Shown here: piece by piece, positions 1-31,568 of the stretch
How the letters are laid out: each line of letters opens with the position of its first letter
Position numbering within the stretch: the stretch's first letter is position 1
From: Guillardia theta CCMP2712
Taxonomy: Eukaryota > Protista > Cryptophyta
Direction of reading: 5' to 3'
DNA length: 64,000 nt
Assembly (NCBI RefSeq): GCF_000315625.1
Contig: NW_005434668.1
Coordinates: 304,938 to 368,937 of the forward strand
Position numbers and translations under genes: made by a program
The notes under the pieces: model-generated
What the model saw: the letters and a program-made list of their open reading frames with translations, nothing else
What the model was told of the DNA's origin: nothing
Databases searched by the model: none

Positions 1-890
1 CCTCCCATACCGCCTTCCAAGGGCGTTCGTTTGTCGATCTCACAGTCAAAGAACTTGTTTTGACCCGTTCGTCTCCTGAACCTGCACACGGAGCAGCTCA
101 GAGCAGAGCTTGCACTGACTGTGGTTCCTCACAAGTTAAATGCCTTCACGATCAAGTTCGACTCGTCCAGGGGAACACTGTCCACGTTGCACCGCAGTAC
201 ATCTTTCCCCCCCGACTCCTGGGCGAGACGTCACCCGAGGTCTACCTCAGACGTGGAAGTAGGCATGACAGGCACCTCCAAGACTGAGACTTTCAAAGTA
301 TCTCCAAGGCTGAGAGCCTGGAACACTGACGCCAGCTCATGGAAACCATCATCTCGCTTCTTGGTGATACGCAGGAAGATGTTTGTCTTTGCCGGGCTGA
401 GAAGGCGTGTCATTGACCGATCATGGTGGTTAGACATCGTCACCTGAAGTATGTCGAAGGTTTTGCCATCATCTGAATCGCTGGGCACATCCACCTCGAG
501 TTGTAGAGCCTGGAAGGAGTCATTCTTTCGCCTTCACAGTAATTGAAATCTGTCACCCGTTTGCGGCGCTGCGGTCGAGACATCTTCCTGTTCCCGTTAC
601 AAATCCGAAGAGATCTACCAGTGTGGGATGTCAAACATCACGATCACGTGAACCATGATCCATACCTTTCCCGCTGACCAAGAAAGGACAGAGCGCAAGC
701 TCTGTAAGGAAAACGAGCTCCAACGAAAGCAGTCTGCCCTGAGACGAGGAGTCATGTATGAGGTATACACACCGCCGCTCGCCTCGCTCGTATCAGGACT
801 GAGACCACAAGCTCCAACTGAACTTGTCTTGCATGGAATGTTCTTCCCTCCCTCCTTCCCTCCCTCCTCCCCTCTTTTCCCTCACCATTT
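1..890 (-). CDS. ispE: 4-diphosphocytidyl-2-C-methyl-D-erythritol kinase (MEP pathway), multi-exon; 3' part runs off the window, start uncertain
   Basis: Spliced translation gives [51 protein letters not shown] and DKRTPLEGGMGG (GHMP kinase Gly-rich loop, nt 1-40). The N-terminal extension fits a plastid presequence. Confidence 0.9.
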
Positions 891-21929: not shown

Positions 21930-23511
21930 ATGATAAAATCGTACCTGATGGAGAATCATACTGGCCAAAGTCGCCATTTACATGTGAAGATATCTTCACA
22001 GCCCCCGACGAGGCTGCACCGGGCTTCCTTTCCCCTCAATCGCGCAAGATCAAGGGAGCTGAGTCAAGAAGGTGAGAGAACGCGGACGATGTGTTTTCCT
22101 TCATGCATGATAACTTGAATACTCTCTGTGTGCGTGCTTCTTCTTGGATGTCACTCTCATCTGGGGTCGTGACTTGACCTGTCTTTACAGCTTCAACTCC
22201 CCAGACACCTTGTTCTGCCGATGGTCTCCGCAGTATGTCCCTAGGATCACATCGGATGAAAACATCGTGACTTCTGTCGAACAATCTTTTGCCAGCTCCA
22301 TCAGCTATGATGAAAGCTTGCGCGCCTACAACGACAAGGCGCATCATTTCACATTGCTGAATGTAGATCCTCCCAACTTCATCACAGAGCAGATCAGCAC
22401 AAACATGGGCAACCTGCAGTCTTCGTACACTTCAGTCGTGAAACCTCTCATTTCGCATCAAGTTCCATGTAATCTCTTTGCCGTCTGCTCGATCTTGTGT
22501 GCTGATCTTGATTCAGGTGTGAAGATCGAGTTGAGATTCGGAAAGAATTTGTCCTCCCCAGAAGTTGGACGGACGCCTAGTTCGTTTTGTAGGATTTCTC
22601 TTCACAATCTTGCAGGTTCAGAGATGGAGGAAAACAAACAAAAGAGTTCAGCCCTGCGCATTCACGACTTGAGGCCGCAGATTACGAGTGAGGTAGTGTA
22701 CAATGACTGCAACCCATCGTGGTGGGAGAGATTCTATGTCTGGAAGGCTTATGCATGTAAGATAGTACAAGAAGGAGAGCATGAGGTGGAACACGTCGAC
22801 GAGGAAGATCTGGATGATGATGACAAGGTTGGGGTGTTATTTAGTGTGCACGACAACACATCTCGATGGAAAGACGCCATCGGTTACGTCATGGTTCCCA
22901 TAACTCGCGGGCAAACGATCTGCGAATCATTTTCTTTGCGTACGAGGGAGGGAAGACTTGTCAAGGATCCTCAGGGAAGATCGGTGAGCATACACGCCAA
23001 GGTCATGTTTGCAGCGGAAGCGCTGGACCCTTCGGTCAGGCAAGCGAGTCACGTCTTGGACAATGATGTCCCGGTGGTAAGCAACAGCGACGACCAAACG
23101 ATACAGACCCTACAGGCCTGCGTTCGCCGACAGCTGGTGTTGGATTGGTATCGATCCTTCCAAAAGCTGAAATTCTTGGGAGAAGCCAAGAAGAGGGTGA
23201 GAGATCACTCGGGGCCAGTGAAGGAATACTGCGGCAACTCAGAGCCTTCGGGCTCTACATTCAACTCCTCATCCTCCACAGCCACGAACCTGCCCGGCCA
23301 TCGCCGGAAGGAAGACAGCTCTCATCGTAAGAGCATGCCAAAGACCTCGACGTCCGACGTGCAGGAGATTGCAAAGATAGAAGCCAAGGCATTTCAAGAT
23401 CTAGCTCGAGAGCTGGACGAGCGAGGATTCGCAGAGCGAGCGAGGATTTATCATTACATGGTAGGTCGACGAAAGAATATGGAAGATGGCAAAACCGACG
23501 GGCTGAGGTGA
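21930..23511 (+). CDS. C2-domain protein with an IQ-like motif (5' exons uncertain)
   Basis: SFCRISL...TSEVVYNDCNPSWWERF...LFSVHDNTSRWKDAIGYVMVPI (C2), and IQTLQACVRRQLVLDWYR (IQ-like). Confidence 0.6.
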
Positions 23512-23536: not shown

Positions 23537-26500
23537 TCATTGCGAGCCAACTTGGACATAAACTTGTCGGGTTTTCGATACGATTACAATAGAGTACACC
23601 ACGGAGGTAACTGCACACACCAGGAGCTGCAAACAACCCGTCAAGGTCAGGGTGAAATAATCCAAGATGCTTACGAGGATCGCAAAGACGACGATCTTAC
23701 ACGTCCGTCTTGTCGAGGCGACAAAAGATTTCATCTCATCCTGCAGCCTCTGCAAGTCTCTTGTCTGGCCGGAGGTGAGAATCTTTGCTCGCCGGAGGAA
23801 GTGGAGTAGGCGATCGTCTTGGGAATAGGCGTTGGGGACGGAAGGAGGTAAAATCTCGCCTGCAGACTCCAACTCATATATAAAGCAATGAACGTCGAAA
23901 CTCGACAACACCTCCTACTCTTCGGATCTCTGCTTTGTGTCTCGCAAGCTCTTTCCACTTTCTCCCGTAGTAGAGAGCAATCTGAGCTGATGTCTTGTTT
24001 GACGTCTTGCTGCAATCACACGCATCAGAGAATTACAACCTCGAAGACAGGACGAACCTGAACAGAGCATCCATGGTTTGCTTCTGAATCTTCCTCCTTA
24101 TGAAGTTGATGTAGTAGATGATGGTGTAGTACAAGATGAGAATGGCGGCTGCCGGGATGATAACGGAGAGGTTGAAGGGGTTGGGGGGGCTGCAGGAGCT
24201 AGCAGACGACCTGCAGCAACGTGACTTGTCATGAGCACATGTCGACATACTCAGAGCTACTCACGTGTCTTCGGCAGCGCTCATAACTGCCTGGGCAAGT
24301 TCGTCGGTGAAGCCATTTTCTCTCAATGTCGCCAGGATCGAGTTGACACCATTTACCAGGTAAGTCGCCGCAAAGATTTCCTGGGTAGTTGACATGAGTC
24401 GAGGTGAAGTCTTGCTGGGATCTCACCCTTCCATACGAGCAGAACCTTGCCGAGAAGTACTTGTCCTGGAGAACAGGGGAGCCGGTGATTCTATAGGGAT
24501 TCCCACAGTTGGACTGCGCCAGTTTGTTCTCGATGAAGTACTAGATAGCAAGCTTGTGTCAGCAGGGCTGGCAGGAGAGCAAAACGGCTCACCGTCAGGA
24601 CGTCGACCTGAGGGAGCAGGAGGGCAGAGACCTGCGACCTCGTCAGCTCCTTCCGTCTCACACACAGTGTCACAGTTTTCTTGTCCAGCTTGTCGAAGCA
24701 GCTCTTCAGATCCGGGCAGTATGACGCTGTGAACTGATAAATCTGATCGAGCTCCACAAAATCTGTGGACTGGAGGACTCCAACCTGCAAGGAGAGCAAG
24801 TCAAAAGGATCATTCGGCTCAAGGTTTTGTCATCGAGCATTTCAGATCACGTACGGACAAGGAACGAGAGGTCAAAAGGAGTCAATTCAAATGTTACTAC
24901 GAGTGTCTCCATCGCTCTCACCGTGAAGCCCCCGATGGTGGTCACGTCACTGATTGAAGCCTCTGCACTCAAGACGTTGACGTTGGAGGAGATTTGACCC
25001 GCAAACACCCCAAAGACGATAATGCCAAAGAGCATCCAGACGGCTGTTATGGCTTTTCCTGCAGTACGAGTTTGATCAGCTGAAAGGAGGCTCGATGTCC
25101 ACGTCACCTAGCCCGGTCACAGGAACTTTGTCTCCATAACCGACAGTTGTCATCGTGACGATGCAGAACCAAGCGCCGTCGAGGACTCCCTGAGAAGAGG
25201 AGGAGCGAGGGCGATGTGAGAGATAGTGAAAGAGGCAAGGGAGGAGAGAGGAGAGGGGAAGATGGGAGAGGTTACATCACAGCATGCAAGCCGGGGCGAG
25301 AGGAAATGAGGATACAGACACGAGGAGGAGCTGCAGGGCCGCCAGCAACATGAACGCAGTAACAGGTTCTTCTTACTCTGGCGTACAACGGATTGAACTG
25401 CTCTGGATTCTCTTTCCTCTCCACCAGCCACAGCAGATGCCCGACGCCAATGAGGAGGAGGAAGAGGAAGCAAACGAAGTTGACGAATGCGGATGAATAG
25501 ACCCTGACGACCGTCTCTTGTCAGACTGCGTCCAAACTCTCTGACGTGTCTTACATGAAGATGACAGCAGACGCAAGGGAGATCGTGTCAGCGGTCGACC
25601 TGACGACAACGATGAAGCCATCGAGGCTGGGAGCTGTCACTGCAGTCATAGACATGCGGGGACAACAGAGTTGAGATGCCGAAGGAATCAGAGCAGGTGT
25701 AGTCATTGTCCAGCTGCACTTTCCCCTGTGGACAGACGAGGTTGTCAAGAACGCGCGTCATATTTGACATGTTCCTCCACACCTTCCACGATGCAAAGAG
25801 CGCCCCCTGCATCGTCCCGTAGTCCGTTGCTCCAGTGATGGGTGGTTTCAAGGAAGAGTACTCGACCGAGGGCTGGGAAGAAAGCAAGTCGGAATTAGAG
25901 ACGCAGCACGAGGGGGAGCAGGAACCTTTTGAACGACAGTTGACGACCATAGCAGTTGAGATGTAACTTCATTCCACGTTGCGATCATCAGGCTGCAGGT
26001 ATGCGTTTGAGGCGACGAAACACAATTGGGAAAACATGTCCGAGTTGAGCAAGACAAACAAGTCAGACAAGGCGAGCATGACAAGAAAGCAAAAATGAGG
26101 AAATTAGATGGAAGAAATCAGAGGTAACCCTTGCACTTATGAATAGAGAGGAGGGGAGCATGGAGCACTCAATGAAGTGACTGACTTTGGCTGCGTGTCG
26201 TTGAATGTGATCCATGGTTGGATGAGTTGAGCTGAGACAACAATGTTGCACCTTCAACGACATTGTGAGCAAAACATCAGTGAGCGAACATGTTCTTCAA
26301 TCTACCAGGCCGCCAGCGGAAACCTTACCAACAATCTCTGATATGCTTGTACACCTGAATACCATTCACAACCCTGCAGGAGATGCGAGTCCGCCCTTGA
26401 TACCTTGCAGTGCACATTCATGCAAGACAGTGTAATAGGTGTAATGGAGTTCGTCGACGACGTTTGTGATTTGACTCTTATGGCCATCGAAAGGGCCAAA

Positions 26501-28987
26501 GATGGAAGGCAAGTCTGATCAAAGAGGGTTAGGAAAATGAAAGATCAGGAAATGTGAGAAATCGAGCATGAAAAATTAAAAAGGGAACAGAAGCGAAATG
26601 AAATAAGGCGGTGAAGAGCGAATTTCAGCGTATCCCTTGCCTGCCTTGATCCATTCCTGCGCTGAGAGTGCGCCGTCAGTGGGATTGTTGTCAGCGATGA
26701 TGAATTTCCGTTCCAGGAATGAAACTTTTCCATCATTGTTCCTGCAACGTGATCATCTTCTCCAACTGAACAGAACAGTAACATCTTCAATCGACAAACT
26801 TAGTCATTTGTCAACACAAGTCACAGCAGTCACATGTCACAAGTCGCTCTGGAAACTTACAGGTCATGTTTGTTGAAGTTGTACTTGATGGAAGAAGAGT
26901 CGAGCGACCCATCGGGGAGAGTGTTCTGGTACCTGGAAATCAAGCATCAGTTTCTCCACTATGCAACAGGGCGCAGAATCACAGAGAGAGGTAGAATTCT
27001 TCAACATCAATCACTCCATTCCTGTCCCTGTCTGCAAAAACGCGGAAATAATGCTGAAGAGAACAAGTCAAGTAATCTTTGACATGTTTCATCCTCCTCT
27101 ACCTCTTCCAGCGAGATTCTCGTGCTCCCATCCAAGTCCCATGCTATCAGGACGAACTTCTTCTCCTCTGCATTGAAGACTCTGATCCCCCTGCGCAGAA
27201 AGTCATGCACAGCCGGAAGATTTCAACCTTGAGGGCGCCAGACTCACGTACTGCTCCATGGGCACGATGAAGGGCAGGGAGTGATTGTCTGTGGGCAGCA
27301 GGAGCAGTAGGTGCATTTCGAGCTAGAGATCTTGGGAGGAGGTCGTCAGCTCATGAAGTCACTTGCCACATTGGCCTACTTGTTCGAGGAGGAGGTTCAC
27401 AATGTTGGTGACGACGATGTCAATGATCTCTTCTGTCATGTAAAACCCTCCCAGCGGACCAGAAGGTAGGTTTTCATCCATCATGACCTGCAAGTAAACA
27501 AGCTATCAGTTGGAGCAAGAGGGAGGAAGAGGAGAGCAAGCAGGGGACCACAGGAAGGAACGAAAGATAGACAGGAGGCAAATGAAATAGAAGGGAGAAG
27601 GGAGAGGGGAGAGGGGAGAGGGGAGAGGGGAGAGGGGAGAGGGGAGAGGGGAGAGGGGAAGCGAGCACAGAGAAGGAAGAAGTGACAAGAACAAGAACAA
27701 GGTGGGGAGTCCAAGAGAGAAACCTTAGGCCCTGTCTCTGCAAGTTGCACCAGAGACCAAAAGTGCCTCATCACAAGCCATTCCTAGAAGCAGCAGTCAG
27801 AATGGAGGTGACGCCCTCACACCATGAGAATAAAGATGGAACAGAGTGTCGTTCTATAGTCTTCACTGTTGATCTCATCACCACCACCACCACTGTTGTC
27901 GTCATCTCGATCATCATCGGATATGTCATCGTCATCATTATCATCATCACCACCACCACCACCACCACCACCACCACCACCACCACCACCACCACCACCA
28001 CCAGTAGCTGCAGATGCAGAAGTATCCATCGCTGTTATGATGAATCTCGTCGTGTTCAACTTACATTCAGAGAAATTTTATAGTCCTTGTTCAAATCCGT
28101 GTACTCAAAGAAAACAGTCTGCCATTCACCATGCGGTTGACAACCCATCCCACGGAAAGCATGTTCTCACCTTGTTGAGGCGATCACGCGCAACAAGCCA
28201 TCCATTCAAATCGACACTGAGAAAAGTTTCCATCTCGCTCGAAGAAAGATATCCATCTCCACTTGTATCCAAAGAATCAAATTGAACCTGCTGCATTATC
28301 AGTGCAAGACAAAAGCATACCTGCTCCCCCAATTTTCATGTCCCCTCCTCTCTCCCATTCCCATTCGCTCTACACCATTTTCTTGTTCCCTCATCTACGT
28401 ACACCCTCGTTCCCCTCTCCCTTCCCATCACCTTGAATCTGGAGCAGTCAAGGACGTCAGTAGTGTTGGACGAAGCTCTATCGGACGCGAGAATGATTGG
28501 GTCGATGAACGGATAGCCAAGGTCCCACACGCAATGACGGCAGCATGGGGCAGACTCACGGATCCACCAGAAAGGATAAACTAGCACCATCGTGTAAGCC
28601 CTTCCTCTCCTGCATTCCTTGACGCGGCTACTACGCATACCTTGTCCGGACGAGTTTGACGATAGAGTGTACCAGACGCTGGGGGAGTGATAGTTGAGCT
28701 CCTCGTAGTTTTCCTGCAGACAGGTAAGTGTGTATGATATTCGACAAGCGAGTGCAGGGAACCTTGGTACATTGCAAGGCGTTGTCCCTTGTGACTGGAG
28801 TAGGACAAGTAATGAAGGCAAGGCTCTGACTGACCATTATACCTTTTAGCATACGTCACATATCACAGTAGAGACATGAAATCCTCCTGCTCCTGCTCCC
28901 TCTCCTGCCGCTGCTCCTGCTGCTCCTGCTGCTGTTCGTCTTACCTGCCATCGCCACCCATACGCCCTTTGCTGCCCGAACGACCAT
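23537..28987 (-). CDS. GluR0-like ionotropic glutamate-receptor-family channel with a K+ selectivity filter, EF-hand-like N-terminal region, many introns
   Basis: Spliced: signal peptide (GVWVAMAGIMVSQSLA-F); M1 FVNFVCFLFLLLIGVGHLLWLVERKENPEQFNPLYAR; pore GVLDGAWFCIVTMTTVGYGDKVPVTGLG (25108-25189); M3 KAITAVWMLFGIIVFGVFAGQISS; S2 end VNSILATLRENGFTDEL; M4 VIIPAAAILILYYTIIYYINF. Confidence 0.85.
27597..27660 (+). repeat. (GGGAGAG)n heptamer repeat in an intron
   Basis: About 8 tandem units, directly visible. Confidence 0.9.
27946..28003 (+). repeat. (CAC)n microsatellite in an intron
   Basis: About 19 cac units. Confidence 0.95.
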
Positions 28988-29039
28988 GGCGACTTTAGCC
29001 CAACAATATCCACTCTGCCCCAGAGTCTAAATGGGAGTC

Positions 29040-29510
29040 AAGACAACAGGCCGGGCCCGGACTCTTCCCGGAGTCCCGGCAGAAACCCGTGCCATGGTGA
29101 CCGACCGTCCGATCCCGGCAACTCCCGGAGTCACCGTCCCGCCGGACCGCTATGCAGTGCGCGGCCCGGCAGCCTGCCGCAGTGCCGGCCGCAGGCGGGG
29201 GCCGGTCAAATATGCCGGGGCGGCCGATTCGGATCGGACTCCGGGATCGGACCCGCCCGGGGCCCGGACTGAGGCTCGTTCGAGTCCGGCGGCTTGAGTC
29301 CGGCGGACCAGGGAGGCCGCAAGGCCCCCGCCACTGGCACCCGGTCACTGCGGCAGTCAGACAAATCATACTTGCAGACTCAGAGCCTGGGCGCCGGATC
29401 AGAGCGCCGGTTGGTCGGGCAACGCCCGGCCGGGCCGGTTCACCGTGAGTCACCCTGCATCACGCGGCCGGCGTCACCGGGCCCGATTGGACAACAGTTC
29501 ACCGGGCTAC
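29040..29510. promoter_or_regulatory. GC-rich palindromic patch upstream of the GluR0-like gene
   Basis: Same vocabulary as the other patches (ccgggcccgg, ccggccggg, gagtc); begins ~50 nt from the ATG at 28987. Confidence 0.45.
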
Positions 29511-29749
29511 CCCGACTCCGAGAAACACAGTTCAGTGGGGAACATCATTACTTCAATGTATGTATTGTCAAAACTTGACTTCAAGTAAATATTCGGATCA
29601 TAGATCTCAGAGATGGGTTGGAGAGAGTCGAAGGAGGCTCCGCGGGGCAAGAATAACTTGTGAGAATCAAGCCGAAGCCTCAGTAAAGCCCCTGCCCATG
29701 AAGTCGAGGTGATCGCCAACATGGAGATTTGAGCTGAGAACGGGGACGC

Positions 29750-31568
29750 TCAGACGATGACGCTCAACTTGGAGTTAGGGATGCTCTTGAATCGATTCTT
29801 GAGGCTCTCCACCACCTCCTGCATCTCCAAGGTCAGCTGCATTTCTGCTCACTCCCCACGTCCTTGCACTACCATCTATGCCCTCAGATCTGCGGCCGCC
29901 CCCCTGCCCCCCCCACTCCCTCTTCCCTCCCTCCTCTCGGTCCTCTCCTCCCTCCCTCCCTCCCTCCCTCCCTTCTCCCCCCGACCCCTCTCCTCCCTCC
30001 CTTCCTTCTCCCCCCGACCCCTCTCCTCCCTCCCTTCCTCAACCTGGTTACTGGCGTCTTCCATATCGATAGGATTTCCGTCAAAGGTCAGGCGTTTGAT
30101 GTAAGGGAAATCGGAGACAAGGAACGTGGGGAGGGACGACAACTGGAAGTCCTCTGAGCAGGTGCAGCAGACAGAGAGGAGGAAAGAGACTGACCTTGTT
30201 CTTTGCCACCATCAAGTTGGTAAGTGACGTGCAGCCCTCAACGTCAGGAAAACTGCACAGTCAAAATGAGAAGCTGCAGGCGGAGGATGGGAAGCGGGTG
30301 GAAGAACAAGATAGAGGTCGGCAGAAACTCTCTGGGACAATGCTACCTCTCAAGCAGGTTTGAGGAGACGTCTAGAGTCTTGAGGGGCAACTTAGACAAG
30401 CCGGTCGGGAGGACTGCAATCTGAAAGACGAGCATAAGAGGAGGAGCTCATTGGACAGATTGCATAACAGAATGAAACAAGCACCTGATTCTCAGACAGC
30501 ATGAGCTTGACCAGCTCCTTCAAGTCAAGAACCGAGTCCGGAATCTTTTAACGAACACGACATGTCATGGAGGTGGAGAGTGCGAGAGCACGATACCGAA
30601 GTGAGCTGATTGCGCGATGCCTCAATGGTCGTCAGGGCCTGAAAACTCCCGATGTTGACAGGAAGCTCCTTCACAAGGTTGTTGGTCACTTGAAACTCCT
30701 GCAAGTTGTCAAGCTGTTTCATGTCTGGCAACGTCTCCAGCTTGTTGCGGTAGATCTCGAGCTTCTCCAGACTCCCCAAGCCCGAGAGCGGAGGTAGCAG
30801 AACCAGGTTGTTGTTGAAGAGGGCAAGGCGGTTCAGGGAGGTGAATCCGCTCAAGTCAGGGGTAGTCTTCAGCTTGTTGTCCGCCAGGTTCAGCTCCACC
30901 ATGTTGTGCAGTGAGGAAAACTTTGTGGGCAACTTGATGATTTTGTTGTTGAAAAGATTCAATTCCTTCAAGGCCGCCAGGTTGCAGATTGTATCCGGGA
31001 GGACAGTGATGTTGTTCTTGTACAGGAAGAGCTTCTCAAGCCTGGCTCCAGGTCAAATGACAGCACAGCACACTCGAACGGACACACACTTGGAGAGATT
31101 TCCAATCTCCTCTGGCAGCTTCGTGAGAGAATTATCGTTCGCATCCAACGTTGTCAGGGAGACTAGGAGGCCAATCTCTACAAGGCAGCTATCACCGCAA
31201 CGAGATAACAGAGCATGGTCACATACCCGCAGGAAGCTCGTCCAGCCTGTTCATGCTACAGTCGAATGTTGTCAGGGAGGTAAAATTCCTTATCCCAGCT
31301 GGAAATACAGCCAGCATGTTCTCCTTGATAATCAGAATGGTGGTTTCCTTGAACCTCCGAGGATTCTGTGCAAGGGTTTAGAGGCATGGCAGCTACATCA
31401 AACAATCATCACCATGGATTCAAAGTCAATCACATCGTTCGATTTGCTCAAATCCAAGATGCTCATGTCTTGAGAACTCTTGTGGGGTTGAGCCTGGGAC
31501 GAGCCCTTGCCAGGAACCGGGTGCGTGGGCACATCCGGATCCTCCTCCGAAGAACAGATGCAGCCCAT
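29750..31568 (-). CDS. Leucine-rich-repeat protein with a predicted N-terminal myristoylation/palmitoylation motif
   Basis: Starts MGCICSS. Repeated LxxLxLxxNxL units (LKELNLFNNKI, LNRLALFNNNL, LEKLEIYRNKL); ends ...SKLSVIV*. Confidence 0.85.

What the first reader, a model, noticed from the sequence alone, without database searches (positions are those of the whole stretch)
23537..28987. Eukaryotic, intron-rich GluR0-type glutamate-receptor channel with a perfect K+ filter (TVGYGD) and an M4 helix
Seen after splicing (the pore frame is not among the listed ORFs): HLLWLVERKENPEQFNPLYARGVLDGAWFCIVTMTTVGYGDKVPVTGLGKAITAVWML, flanked by S1-like and S2-like segments and an M4. M3 lacks SYTANLAAF and reads GVFAGQISS. 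Known: cyanobacterial GluR0 has a very similar WLAE..KNPEQF...GMWFALVTLTTVGYGD segment and is K+-selective but lacks M4; rotifer AvGluR1 is an intermediate. GluR0-like sequences have been noted in some algae, but I know of no functional characterisation. Inference: a ligand-gated K+ channel bridging prokaryotic and eukaryotic iGluRs.
Basis: partly seen in the sequence, partly recalled or inferred. Interest (0 to 1): 0.78.

Follow-up and report, generated by a model that had tools for sequence, protein, structure and literature searches.

The report
EF-hand-capped K+-pore glutamate-receptor-like channel
This intron-rich gene of the cryptophyte alga Guillardia theta encodes a glutamate-receptor-shaped channel subunit with a potassium-channel pore, whose outer side carries calcium-binding EF-hands where animal and plant receptors carry their amino-terminal domain. 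Its ligand pocket has lost the residues that normally hold an amino acid, so what opens the channel is an open and testable question.

Summary
On the minus strand, 28987..23537, lies one intact gene of 31 exons and 954 codons. It is Guillardia theta GUITHDRAFT_100940, annotated only as hypothetical / EF-hand protein. The quoted pore peptide is exact and is joined by canonical GT-AG introns.

Predicted structures of the annotated product and of an intron-poor paralogue match iGluR LBD-TMD chains and periplasmic amino-acid-binding proteins at Z 15-16. So the two segments that flank the pore form a binding-protein clamshell, and a fourth helix sits where M4 does.

- About 400 N-terminal residues hold five canonical EF-hand loops and one degenerate one, behind a signal peptide.
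- There is a fifth membrane helix at the C-terminus.
- Both hallmark amino-acid-binding residues are lost. The S1 Arg is present in 1 of 20 family members and the S2 Asp/Glu in 0 of 20, against 43 of 45 for each in other GYGD relatives.

The family is found in cryptophytes and Goniomonas, and it is under strong purifying selection (dN/dS 0.06). The public gene model omits five conserved exons.

The 'bridge' to eukaryotic iGluRs was not tested. Simpler GYGD+M4 proteins exist in other protists. The scan noted the same design earlier on other DNA of this genome (s1-446759, s1-439522). I found no paper describing it.

The parts
23537..28987 (-). Whole gene GUITHDRAFT_100940: 31 exons, 954 codons, 30 introns of 40-281 nt (29 GT-AG, 1 GC-AG)
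   Evidence: Exon model. It is 817/954 identical with 2 gap columns to P0249 (exon-by-exon comparison). dN/dS is 0.06.
28945..28987 (-). Exon 1: start codon and the n/h region of the signal peptide (MVVRAAKGVWVAMA). Absent from the NCBI model.
   Evidence: Matches the P0249 N-terminus. The donor is gtaaga.
28763..28842 (-). Exon 2: end of the signal peptide and the conserved CPTP...C motif
28641..28713 (-). Exon 3: N-terminal ectodomain
28432..28580 (-). Exon 4: Cys-rich motif CCRHCVW, conserved in the family
   Evidence: Family HMM 33.8 bits.
28171..28287 (-). Exon 5: EF-hand 1, with the canonical loop DTSGDGYLSSSE at 28269-28234
   Evidence: Pfam EF-hand_5 E 3.4e-5 on this exon alone.
28065..28118 (-). 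Exon 6: EF-hand 2. The loop DLNKDYKISLNE runs on into exon 7.
   Evidence: Pfam EF-hand pair and SPARC_Ca_bdg on P0065.
27724..27783 (-). Exon 7: exiting helix of EF-hand 2
27380..27487 (-). Exon 8: ectodomain linker (GPLGGFYM...LLLEQ)
27248..27330 (-). Exon 9: Cys-rich insert (six Cys), shared with P0249
27103..27190 (-). Exon 10: EF-hand 3, with the canonical loop DLDGSTRISLEE at 27138-27103
26983..27053 (-). Exon 11: EF-hand 4, with the canonical loop DRDRNGVIDVEE at 27032-26997
   Evidence: Pfam EF-hand_6 E 8.9e-5 on the exon.
26861..26932 (-). Exon 12: start of EF-hand 5. The loop DLNNDGKVSFLE spans the junction with exon 13.
26641..26741 (-). Exon 13: the rest of EF-hand 5 and a degenerate sixth loop (DNNPTDGALSAQE). 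Absent from the NCBI model. It is followed by the only GC-AG intron (CAG|gcaagg, 26640-26515).
   Evidence: Family HMM 28.3 bits; sequence; present in P0249.
26404..26514 (-). Exon 14: conserved linker (DLPSIFGPFDGH...HECALQG). Absent from the NCBI model.
   Evidence: Family HMM 35.1 bits.
26306..26354 (-). Exon 15: short linker exon. Not coded in this frame in the NCBI model.
   Evidence: Matches P0249.
26186..26251 (-). Exon 16: first strand of S1 (CNIVVSAQLIQPWITF). Absent from the NCBI model.
25926..25992 (-). Exon 17: first helix of S1 (LMIATWNEVTSQLLW)
25783..25872 (-). Exon 18: S1. It ends in ALFASWK, where Lys stands at the column of the ligand-binding Arg.
25667..25725 (-). Exon 19: S1 (the family-invariant Cys of YTCS)
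25555..25626 (-). Exon 20: last strand of S1 (DGFIVVVR) and the pre-M1 segment
25377..25503 (-). Exon 21: M1 (25478-25422) and WLVERKENPEQF
   Evidence: Family HMM 36.9 bits.
25108..25189 (-). Exon 22: pore helix and the K+ signature TVGYGD (25147-25130)
   Evidence: Ion_trans_2 E 1.4e-9.
24922..25058 (-). Exon 23: M3 (25053-24997; reads GVFAGQISS, with no SYTANLAAF) and the start of S2
24674..24784 (-). Exon 24: S2
   Evidence: Family HMM 20.0 bits.
24593..24631 (-). Exon 25: S2, LLLPQVDVL. Pro stands at the column of the ligand-binding Asp.
24427..24540 (-). Exon 26: S2 with the family-invariant CGNP motif
24265..24380 (-). Exon 27: last helices of S2
24058..24210 (-). Exon 28: M4 helix (24164-24108), followed by the basic stretch RRKIQK
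   Evidence: Hydropathy. The model aligns with the M4 range of GluA chains.
23912..24009 (-). Exon 29: cytosolic segment
23675..23859 (-). Exon 30: long cytosolic helix and the start of the fifth membrane helix
23537..23626 (-). Exon 31: end of the fifth membrane helix (M5, 23683-23579 across the intron), a short tail and the stop codon

Best explanation
The gene encodes one subunit of a probably tetrameric channel built on the ionotropic-glutamate-receptor plan. The order of parts is: signal peptide, an extracytosolic module of about 400 residues with Cys-rich motifs and five canonical plus one degenerate EF-hands, S1, M1, a re-entrant pore loop with the K+ signature TVGYGD, M3, S2, M4, a cytosolic helical segment, and a fifth membrane helix. 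S1 and S2 fold together into a periplasmic-binding-protein-type clamshell that sits on the pore as in GluR0 and iGluRs, so clamshell movement most likely pulls M3 and gates a K+-selective pore. Both residues that hold the alpha-carboxylate and alpha-amino groups of the ligand in GluR0-type and iGluR clamshells are replaced throughout this family. The agonist is therefore probably not an ordinary amino acid. The EF-hand module stands where the amino-terminal domain stands in animal and plant receptors, and it probably binds Ca2+ on the outer or lumenal side and either stabilises or regulates the clamshell. Shown here: gene structure, domain order, predicted folds, loss of the two binding residues, conservation, and purifying selection. 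Inferred: tetramer formation, K+ selectivity, orientation in the membrane, Ca2+ binding, and any gating.
For: Gene and product:
- The 31-exon open model has canonical splice sites.
- It is 86% identical end to end to an uninterrupted ORF on an independent 2.9-kb contig.
- dN/dS is 0.06 overall, 0.02 in the pore and 0.03 in the EF region.

Pore:
- Ion_trans_2 scores 45.7 bits and Lig_chan 30.4 bits (cut-off 30.8) on the annotated product.
- Lig_chan scores 37.9 bits on a paralogue.

Fold:
- The AF2 model of the annotated product has pLDDT 81.6.
- By Foldseek it matches GluA1/GluA2 LBD-TMD chains at E 6e-8 over 350-435 columns.
- By VIA it matches AMPA, kainate and NMDA LBD-TMD at Z 15-16 with 300-357 residues aligned, model range 328..723, which includes M4. 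It also matches a bacterial amino-acid-binding domain at Z 15.0, rmsd 3.3, 199 of 222 residues.
- The paralogue model matches GlnBP, LAO and the GluR0 ligand-binding cores 2pyy and 1ii5 at Z 15.4-16.4, with 209-227 residues aligned across the pore insertion.
- The family profile against the cyanobacterial GluR0-like profile gives hhalign probability 99.9%, E 2.4e-32, over 307 columns.

EF-hands:
- Five 12-residue canonical loops are present.
- Pfam EF-hand families score E 1e-8 to 1e-9, and SPARC_Ca_bdg 22.2 bits (cut-off 22).

Orientation:
- Signal-peptide-like N-termini occur in the window gene and its relatives.
- There is no hydrophobic helix between the signal peptide and M1.
- There are 14 Cys before M1 and five more in S2 and the stretch before M4.
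- Basic residues follow M1 (ERKE) and M4 (RRKIQK), and none follow M3.

Loss of the ligand-binding pair:
- Arg is present in 25/25 and 18/20 of the other GYGD relatives, but in 1/20 of this family (Lys in the window).
- Asp/Glu is present in 23/25 and 20/20 of the others, but in 0/20 of this family (Pro in the window).
Against: - No functional data exist for any member.
- No transcript of this exact gene was seen; the transcript-like evidence comes from an 86%-identical relative.
- The AF2 alignments included bacterial GluR0-like rows, which favours a clamshell prediction.
- The folded product (P0065) is the public model, which lacks the first S1 strand.
- S1 is weakly conserved. Pfam SBP_bac_3 and Lig_chan-Glu_bd reach only E 0.06-0.13, so the binding-residue columns rest on a low-identity alignment.
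- EF-hands of micromolar affinity would be permanently saturated in sea water, which fits a structural role better than a sensing role.
- M3 lacks the SYTANLAAF gate motif, so coupling may differ from that of iGluRs.
Confidence: 0.7

Rival explanations
1. One reading: an amino-acid-gated (glutamate-gated), K+-selective GluR0-type receptor that has merely gained an M4 helix.
For: The architecture and the TVGYGD filter match. The nearest outside relatives are cyanobacterial GluR0-like proteins. A conserved acidic residue lies two positions after the missing Asp, in the motif P-Q/H-x-D, and the window has Lys at the Arg column. A shifted binding mode is therefore conceivable.
Against: Neither the Arg nor the Asp/Glu of the binding pair is kept in this family: Arg is present in 1/20 members and Asp/Glu in 0/20. 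Each is kept in 43/45 other GYGD relatives, including the short eukaryotic M4-bearing ones. The helix that carries the Arg is not predicted in either model. This reading also ignores the conserved 400-residue EF-hand module.
Confidence: 0.2
2. Inverted topology. The N-terminal EF-hands and the clamshell are cytosolic and the pore has the usual K+-channel orientation, which would make this an intracellular-Ca2+-activated K+ channel.
For: Most EF-hands are cytosolic Ca2+ sensors. The scan reports a related gene in this genome with a cytosolic EF-hand module (s1-439522; not checked here).
Against: N-terminal signal-peptide-like segments are conserved across the family. Cys-rich motifs and a SPARC-type EF-hand match point to an oxidising compartment. 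The distribution of basic residues puts the loops after M1 and M4 in the cytosol. All structural matches are to iGluRs and GluR0, whose clamshell faces outward.
Confidence: 0.07
3. It is not a working channel. It could be a decaying paralogue, or a receptor or adhesion protein that keeps a channel-like fold without conducting.
For: There is no direct expression evidence for this exact gene. The public gene model is faulty. The genome holds at least four paralogues.
Against: The 954-codon frame is open across 31 exons. dN/dS is 0.06, with the strongest constraint in the pore at 0.02. The K+ signature and pore helix are invariant in all family members. The orthologue is carried on a transcript-like contig.
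Confidence: 0.03

Closest known systems
GluR0 and GluR0-like prokaryotic K+-selective glutamate receptors (Synechocystis, Nostoc; ligand-binding cores 1ii5, 2pyy)
   Same: Both have a clamshell split into S1 and S2 by an M1-P-M3 pore with TVGYGD followed by K-x-P. The W..ER..N..F..Y..G motif around M1 is shared. These are the best non-family sequence relatives (E 1e-19; hhalign E 2.4e-32). Fold match is Z 15.4-15.9.
   Different: This protein has a eukaryotic signal peptide, a roughly 400-residue EF-hand module before S1, an M4 and an M5. It lacks the ligand-binding Arg and Asp. Its gene has 30 spliceosomal introns.
Eukaryotic iGluRs (AMPA, kainate, NMDA, delta) and plant GLRs
   Same: The LBD-TMD layout, including a helix at the M4 position, is the same. 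These are the best whole-chain structural matches (Foldseek E 1e-16 to 6e-8; VIA Z 15-16). The Pfam Lig_chan score lies at or near its cut-off.
   Different: The pore carries a K+-channel signature instead of the Q/R/N-type loop. There is no SYTANLAAF in M3. There is no LIVBP-type amino-terminal domain; EF-hands stand in its place. There is an extra fifth helix, and the amino-acid-binding pair is lost. Sequence-level homology of M4 was not detected.
AvGluR1 of the rotifer Adineta vaga, described in PMC11479355 as a eukaryotic four-helix iGluR that is K+-selective
   Same: It is a eukaryotic iGluR-type subunit that combines M4 with a K+ selectivity signature.
   Different: No AvGluR1 sequence was available here, so no direct comparison was made. 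From my own knowledge, not checked here: AvGluR1 binds amino acids, and I know of no report of EF-hands in it.
Short eukaryotic GYGD + M4 GluR0-like proteins (Platysulcus tardus, Chlorokybus atmophyticus, Tetraselmis astigmatica; 450-640 aa)
   Same: They share signal peptide, S1, pore with GYGD, S2 and M4. In the tree, all M4-bearing rows lie on one side of a single branch from the M4-less rows (support 88-91).
   Different: They have no EF-hand module and no M5, and they keep the Arg and Asp/Glu binding pair (18/20 and 20/20).
SPARC/BM-40-type extracellular EF-hand pair
   Same: An EF-hand pair in a secreted, Cys-rich setting. Pfam SPARC_Ca_bdg scores 22.2 bits against a cut-off of 22.
   Different: The score is marginal. 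Here there are three pairs, fused to a channel.

Membership tests
iGluR superfamily (architecture) | Bilobed periplasmic-binding-protein-type ligand-binding domain made of two segments that flank the pore | tested here: met
   VIA gives Z 15.0 (rmsd 3.3, 199/222 residues) to a bacterial amino-acid-binding domain, and Z 15-16 to iGluR LBD-TMD chains, for the window's annotated product. The paralogue gives Z 15.4-16.4. These are predicted structures, not experimental ones.
iGluR superfamily (architecture) | M1 - re-entrant pore loop - M3 between S1 and S2 | tested here: met
   Ion_trans_2 scores 45.7 bits. Lig_chan scores 30.4 bits (cut-off 30.8) on P0065 and 37.9 bits on the paralogue. Hydropathy supports the helices.
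iGluR superfamily (architecture) | M4 helix after S2 | tested here: met
   A hydrophobic helix at residues 796-814 is followed by RRK. Model residues up to 719-727 align with GluA residues 819-828. Only equivalence of position is shown; sequence homology is not.
iGluR superfamily (architecture) | SYTANLAAF-type gate motif in M3 | tested here: not met
   M3 reads WMLFGIIVFGVFAGQISSNV.
iGluR superfamily (architecture) | LIVBP-type amino-terminal domain | tested here: not met
   The N-terminal 400 residues give only EF-hand and SPARC_Ca_bdg matches. The AF2 model of this region is helical, like EF-hands.
Amino-acid-binding clamshells (GluR0, iGluR, SBP_bac_3) | S1 Arg that binds the alpha-carboxylate and S2 Asp/Glu that binds the alpha-amino group | tested here: not met
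   By alignment column, Arg is present in 1/20 and Asp/Glu in 0/20 members of this family. In other GYGD relatives each is present in 43/45. The window has Lys and Pro at these columns. Caveat: the S1 alignment has low identity.
GluR0-type prokaryotic receptor | K+ channel signature T-V-G-Y-G-D in the pore loop | tested here: met
   TVGYGD lies at 25147-25130 and is invariant in the family.
GluR0-type prokaryotic receptor | Minimal layout S1-M1-P-M2-S2, with no N-terminal domain and no M4 | tested here: not met
   An EF-hand module, M4 and M5 are all present.
GluR0-type prokaryotic receptor | Glutamate-gated, K+-selective current | not testable with these tools
   This needs electrophysiology.
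EF-hand Ca2+-binding proteins | Canonical 12-residue loop (D-x-[DNS]-x-[DNSTG]-x6-[ED]) between two helices, arranged in pairs | tested here: met
   Five canonical loops lie at residues 122, 162, 274, 293 and 332, with a degenerate sixth. Pfam EF-hand_5 and EF-hand_6 score E 4e-9 and 1e-8. Ca2+ binding itself was not tested.
Cryptist EF-hand/GYGD channel family (unnamed) | Collinear match to the family profile from the N-terminal Cys motif to M5 | tested here: met
   Exon-by-exon HMM hits cover profile positions 16-984 of 1009. The clade has 100% support, and the window sits in a subclade with the Baffinella sequence at 98-99%.

The most novel reading that the evidence does not exclude
In this reading the iGluR scaffold has been repurposed. 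A hexad of extracytosolic EF-hands has replaced the amino-terminal domain and, together with a clamshell that no longer binds amino acids, makes the channel a sensor of external or lumenal Ca2+. It might instead sense Ca2+ plus a ligand that is not an amino acid. Either way, that signal would be coupled directly to a K+ conductance. This would be a gating principle not known for any iGluR or K+ channel.
Probability: 0.3. Interest if true: 0.85.

Novelty: new variant of a known kind. Interest (0 to 1): 0.7.

Why it matters
iGluRs are thought to have arisen by insertion of a K+-channel pore into a binding protein, with the amino-terminal domain and M4 added later.

This conserved, selected family, found in Cryptophyceae and the plastid-less Goniomonas, keeps the ancestral K+ filter and has M4. 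It carries EF-hands where other receptors carry the amino-terminal domain, and it has lost the amino-acid-binding pair.

The family therefore offers a natural experiment on three questions: what M4 and the top layer contribute to these channels, how a clamshell can gate a true K+ filter, and whether Ca2+ on the outer side can drive such a scaffold. It is directly testable by expression in oocytes.

In practical terms, the public model of GUITHDRAFT_100940 is wrong. It misses five exons, one of them behind a GC-AG intron.

Tried and rejected
- Pfam on single exons gave only the pore and one EF-hand. S1 and S2 are too diverged for SBP_bac_3 or Lig_chan-Glu_bd (E 0.06-0.13).
- Sequence search of PDB, with a paralogue and with the family profile, returned only K+ channels in the rows shown. 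The fold had to be tested through predicted structures.
- My first automatic exon chain allowed GT donors only. It skipped S1 and mis-joined the exons around the GC-AG intron. Models 2 and 3 were superseded once P0249 showed the extra Cys-rich exon, the 49-nt exon and the 57-nt intron.
- A search of the window's own genome for PF10613 found nothing. This says little in an intron-rich genome.
- An 'ordinary K+ channel' is rejected by the fold and topology results.
- Origin by plastid-derived gene transfer was considered. The presence of the family in plastid-less Goniomonas argues against it, but it was not tested further.
- The literature searches and the papers read in part yielded no description of this family.
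- The joined spliced model was never sent to a database or fold tool. Searches used exons by reference, the public product P0065 and intron-poor paralogues. The joined model was used only inside local scripts, to check frames and to align with proteins already fetched.

Full report
**What is there**

The window belongs to an 87.1-Mb assembly in 669 contigs. This is Guillardia theta CCMP2712, because proteins encoded in it carry GUITHDRAFT names.

The finding lies on the minus strand. Three-frame translation shows the quoted pore peptide split over three frames. The DNA shows the joins...NPLYAR|gtaaga...cag|GVLDGAWFCIVTMTTVGYGDKVPVTGL|gtgacg...cag|(G)KAITAVWML. The pore exon alone matches Pfam Ion_trans_2 at E 1.4e-9.

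**Gene model**

Intron-poor paralogues in the same genome and transcript-derived relatives gave a family profile. Window exons match that profile collinearly from position 16 to 984 of 1009.

The profile search of protein representatives returned P0065. Every residue but one of P0065 maps exactly onto window exons. It is XP_005840214.1, GUITHDRAFT_100940, 'hypothetical protein' in NCBI and 'EF-hand domain-containing protein' in UniRef.

A word search with P0065 then found P0249, a 952-aa protein encoded without interruption on a 2,946-nt JGI contig. Guided by P0249, the final model has 31 exons and 954 codons, running from the ATG at 28987 to the stop at 23539-23537. There are 29 GT-AG introns and one GC-AG intron, mostly 40-60 nt long.

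The model is 817/954 identical to P0249, with two gap columns. The public model lacks the 5' exon and the four exons between 26741 and 26186, and it has 107 gap columns against P0249. The GC donor (CAG|gcaagg) probably caused that error.

Against the P0249 contig, dN/dS is 0.06 overall, 0.02 in the pore and 0.03 in the EF-hand region. dS is about 1.4, which is near saturation. The gene is intact and under constraint.

**Fold and architecture**

Two AlphaFold2 models were made: an intron-poor paralogue from S1 to M4 (pLDDT 74.6) and the window's annotated product (pLDDT 81.6).

- By Foldseek the paralogue model best matches full iGluR chains, at E 1e-16 to 1e-13 over about 520 columns.
- By VIA-align, its S1 and S2 together match glutamine-binding protein, LAO and the GluR0 ligand-binding cores 2pyy and 1ii5 at Z 15.4-16.4, with 209-227 residues aligned.
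- The window product matches GluA1/GluA2 LBD-TMD chains at E 6e-8.
- By VIA it matches AMPA, kainate and NMDA LBD-TMD at Z 15-16 with 300-357 residues aligned. The model range 328..723 reaches the M4 range of the receptors. It also matches a bacterial binding domain at Z 15.0, rmsd 3.3.

Hydropathy gives a signal-peptide-like N-terminus, then M1, M3, M4 and a fifth helix near the C-terminus. The TVGYGD filter lies at residues 595-600.

The first 400 residues carry Cys-rich motifs and five canonical EF-hand loops, plus a degenerate sixth. One EF-hand pair also touches the SPARC extracellular Ca-binding model (22.2 bits, cut-off 22).

Several points indicate that this module and the clamshell face outward or into a lumen:
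- A signal-peptide-like segment precedes the module in the window gene and in relatives.
- No membrane helix lies between it and S1.
- Basic residues follow M1 and M4 but not M3.

This orientation is an inference. The module stands where iGluRs carry their amino-terminal domain.

**Ligand site**

I aligned 20 family members, 20 short M4-bearing GYGD proteins and 25 M4-less (bacterial-type) GYGD proteins.

| Binding residue | M4-less GYGD | Short M4-bearing GYGD | EF-hand family | Window |
|---|---|---|---|---|
| S1 Arg | 25/25 | 18/20 | 1/20 | Lys |
| S2 Asp/Glu | 23/25 | 20/20 | 0/20 (Pro in 19) | Pro |

The helix that normally carries the Arg is not predicted in either model. A canonical amino-acid agonist is therefore unlikely. 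S1 is weakly conserved, so this rests on a low-identity alignment.

**Relatives**

The profile search of 1.84 billion representatives found 19,235 proteins at E up to 0.001 and 114 at E up to 1e-30. About 35 of the representatives listed matched the profile outside the pore region.

Named family members come from Guillardia, Rhodomonas, Hanusia, Baffinella and the plastid-less Goniomonas. The genome holds at least four paralogues.

Outside the family, the nearest relatives are cyanobacterial GluR0-like proteins (hhalign E 2.4e-32).

About twenty shorter GYGD proteins also have a helix after S2. Three of the ten looked up are named, and all three are eukaryotic: Platysulcus, Chlorokybus and Tetraselmis.

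Quick maximum-likelihood trees gave the following:
- The EF-hand family is one clade with 100% support, with Goniomonas sister to the rest.
- The window gene sits in a subclade with a Baffinella sequence, at 98-99%.
- All M4-less rows lie on one side of a single branch (88-91), even when the M4 columns are excluded.

The root is unknown and no canonical iGluR was in the tree. The 'bridge' claim therefore remains untested.

**Literature and earlier notes**

The literature searches and the papers I read in part turned up no description of this family.
- PMC11479355 names AvGluR1 as the eukaryotic K+-selective four-helix iGluR.
- PMC12226733 places some Cryptista iGluRs in a GLR-like clade.

The scan itself noted the same design on other DNA of this genome (s1-446759) and a variant said to have a cytosolic EF-hand (s1-439522). 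I reached the reading independently on this gene before seeing those notes.

**Limits**

- All folds are predictions, and the alignments behind them included bacterial GluR0-like rows.
- There are no functional data and no transcript of this exact gene.
- The joined spliced model was not submitted to any database or fold tool. It was used only in local scripts for frame checks and for alignment with proteins already fetched.

**Verdict**

This is a real, conserved, new variant of the iGluR/GluR0 kind.

Noticed in passing
window 23537-28987 (-): The public gene model (XP_005840214.1, 849 aa) is wrong. It starts at an internal ATG (28852). It also omits exons 26741-26641, 26514-26404 and 26251-26186, reads 26372-26331 in another frame, and so has 107 gap columns against a transcript-like orthologue. 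The missed region lies behind a GC-AG intron.
   Followed up: yes
window 27948-28003 and 27589-27682: Two simple repeats lie inside introns 6 and 7: a perfect (CAC)n run of 18.7 copies, and a G-rich 7/14-nt array (AGAGGGG). They produce the long poly-Thr/Val/Gly and PLSPL open frames seen in the ORF list.
   Followed up: partly
window 22144-23511 (+): A 455-codon open frame on the opposite strand ends 26 nt from the channel gene's stop codon, so the two genes are convergent and the 3' ends probably overlap. It has no Pfam match at E up to 0.01.
   Followed up: partly
P0114, P0196, P0108 and about 17 unnamed proteins: These are short (450-640 aa) eukaryotic proteins with signal peptide, S1, GYGD pore, S2 and an M4-like helix. 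They come from Platysulcus tardus, Chlorokybus atmophyticus and Tetraselmis astigmatica, and they keep the Arg/Asp binding pair. They are simpler candidates than the window gene for a link between GluR0 and eukaryotic iGluRs.
   Followed up: partly
G000:C84:406145-406375 (L005, L017): Another pore exon of GluR0 type (TVGYGDKVP) lies in the same genome, with flanks that do not match the EF-hand family. It may be the cytosolic-EF-hand variant noted by the scan as s1-439522.
   Followed up: no
window 28995-29450: A G+C-rich stretch lies directly upstream of the start codon; the 28001-30000 window is 56% G+C. It produces long spurious Arg/Pro/Gly open frames on both strands and may be a promoter-proximal patch.
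   Followed up: no
window 23537-28987, introns: Twenty of the 30 introns are 40-57 nt long, and several are in frame and free of stop codons (42, 48, 57 and 60 nt). Open frames alone therefore cannot tell exon from intron here.
   Followed up: partly
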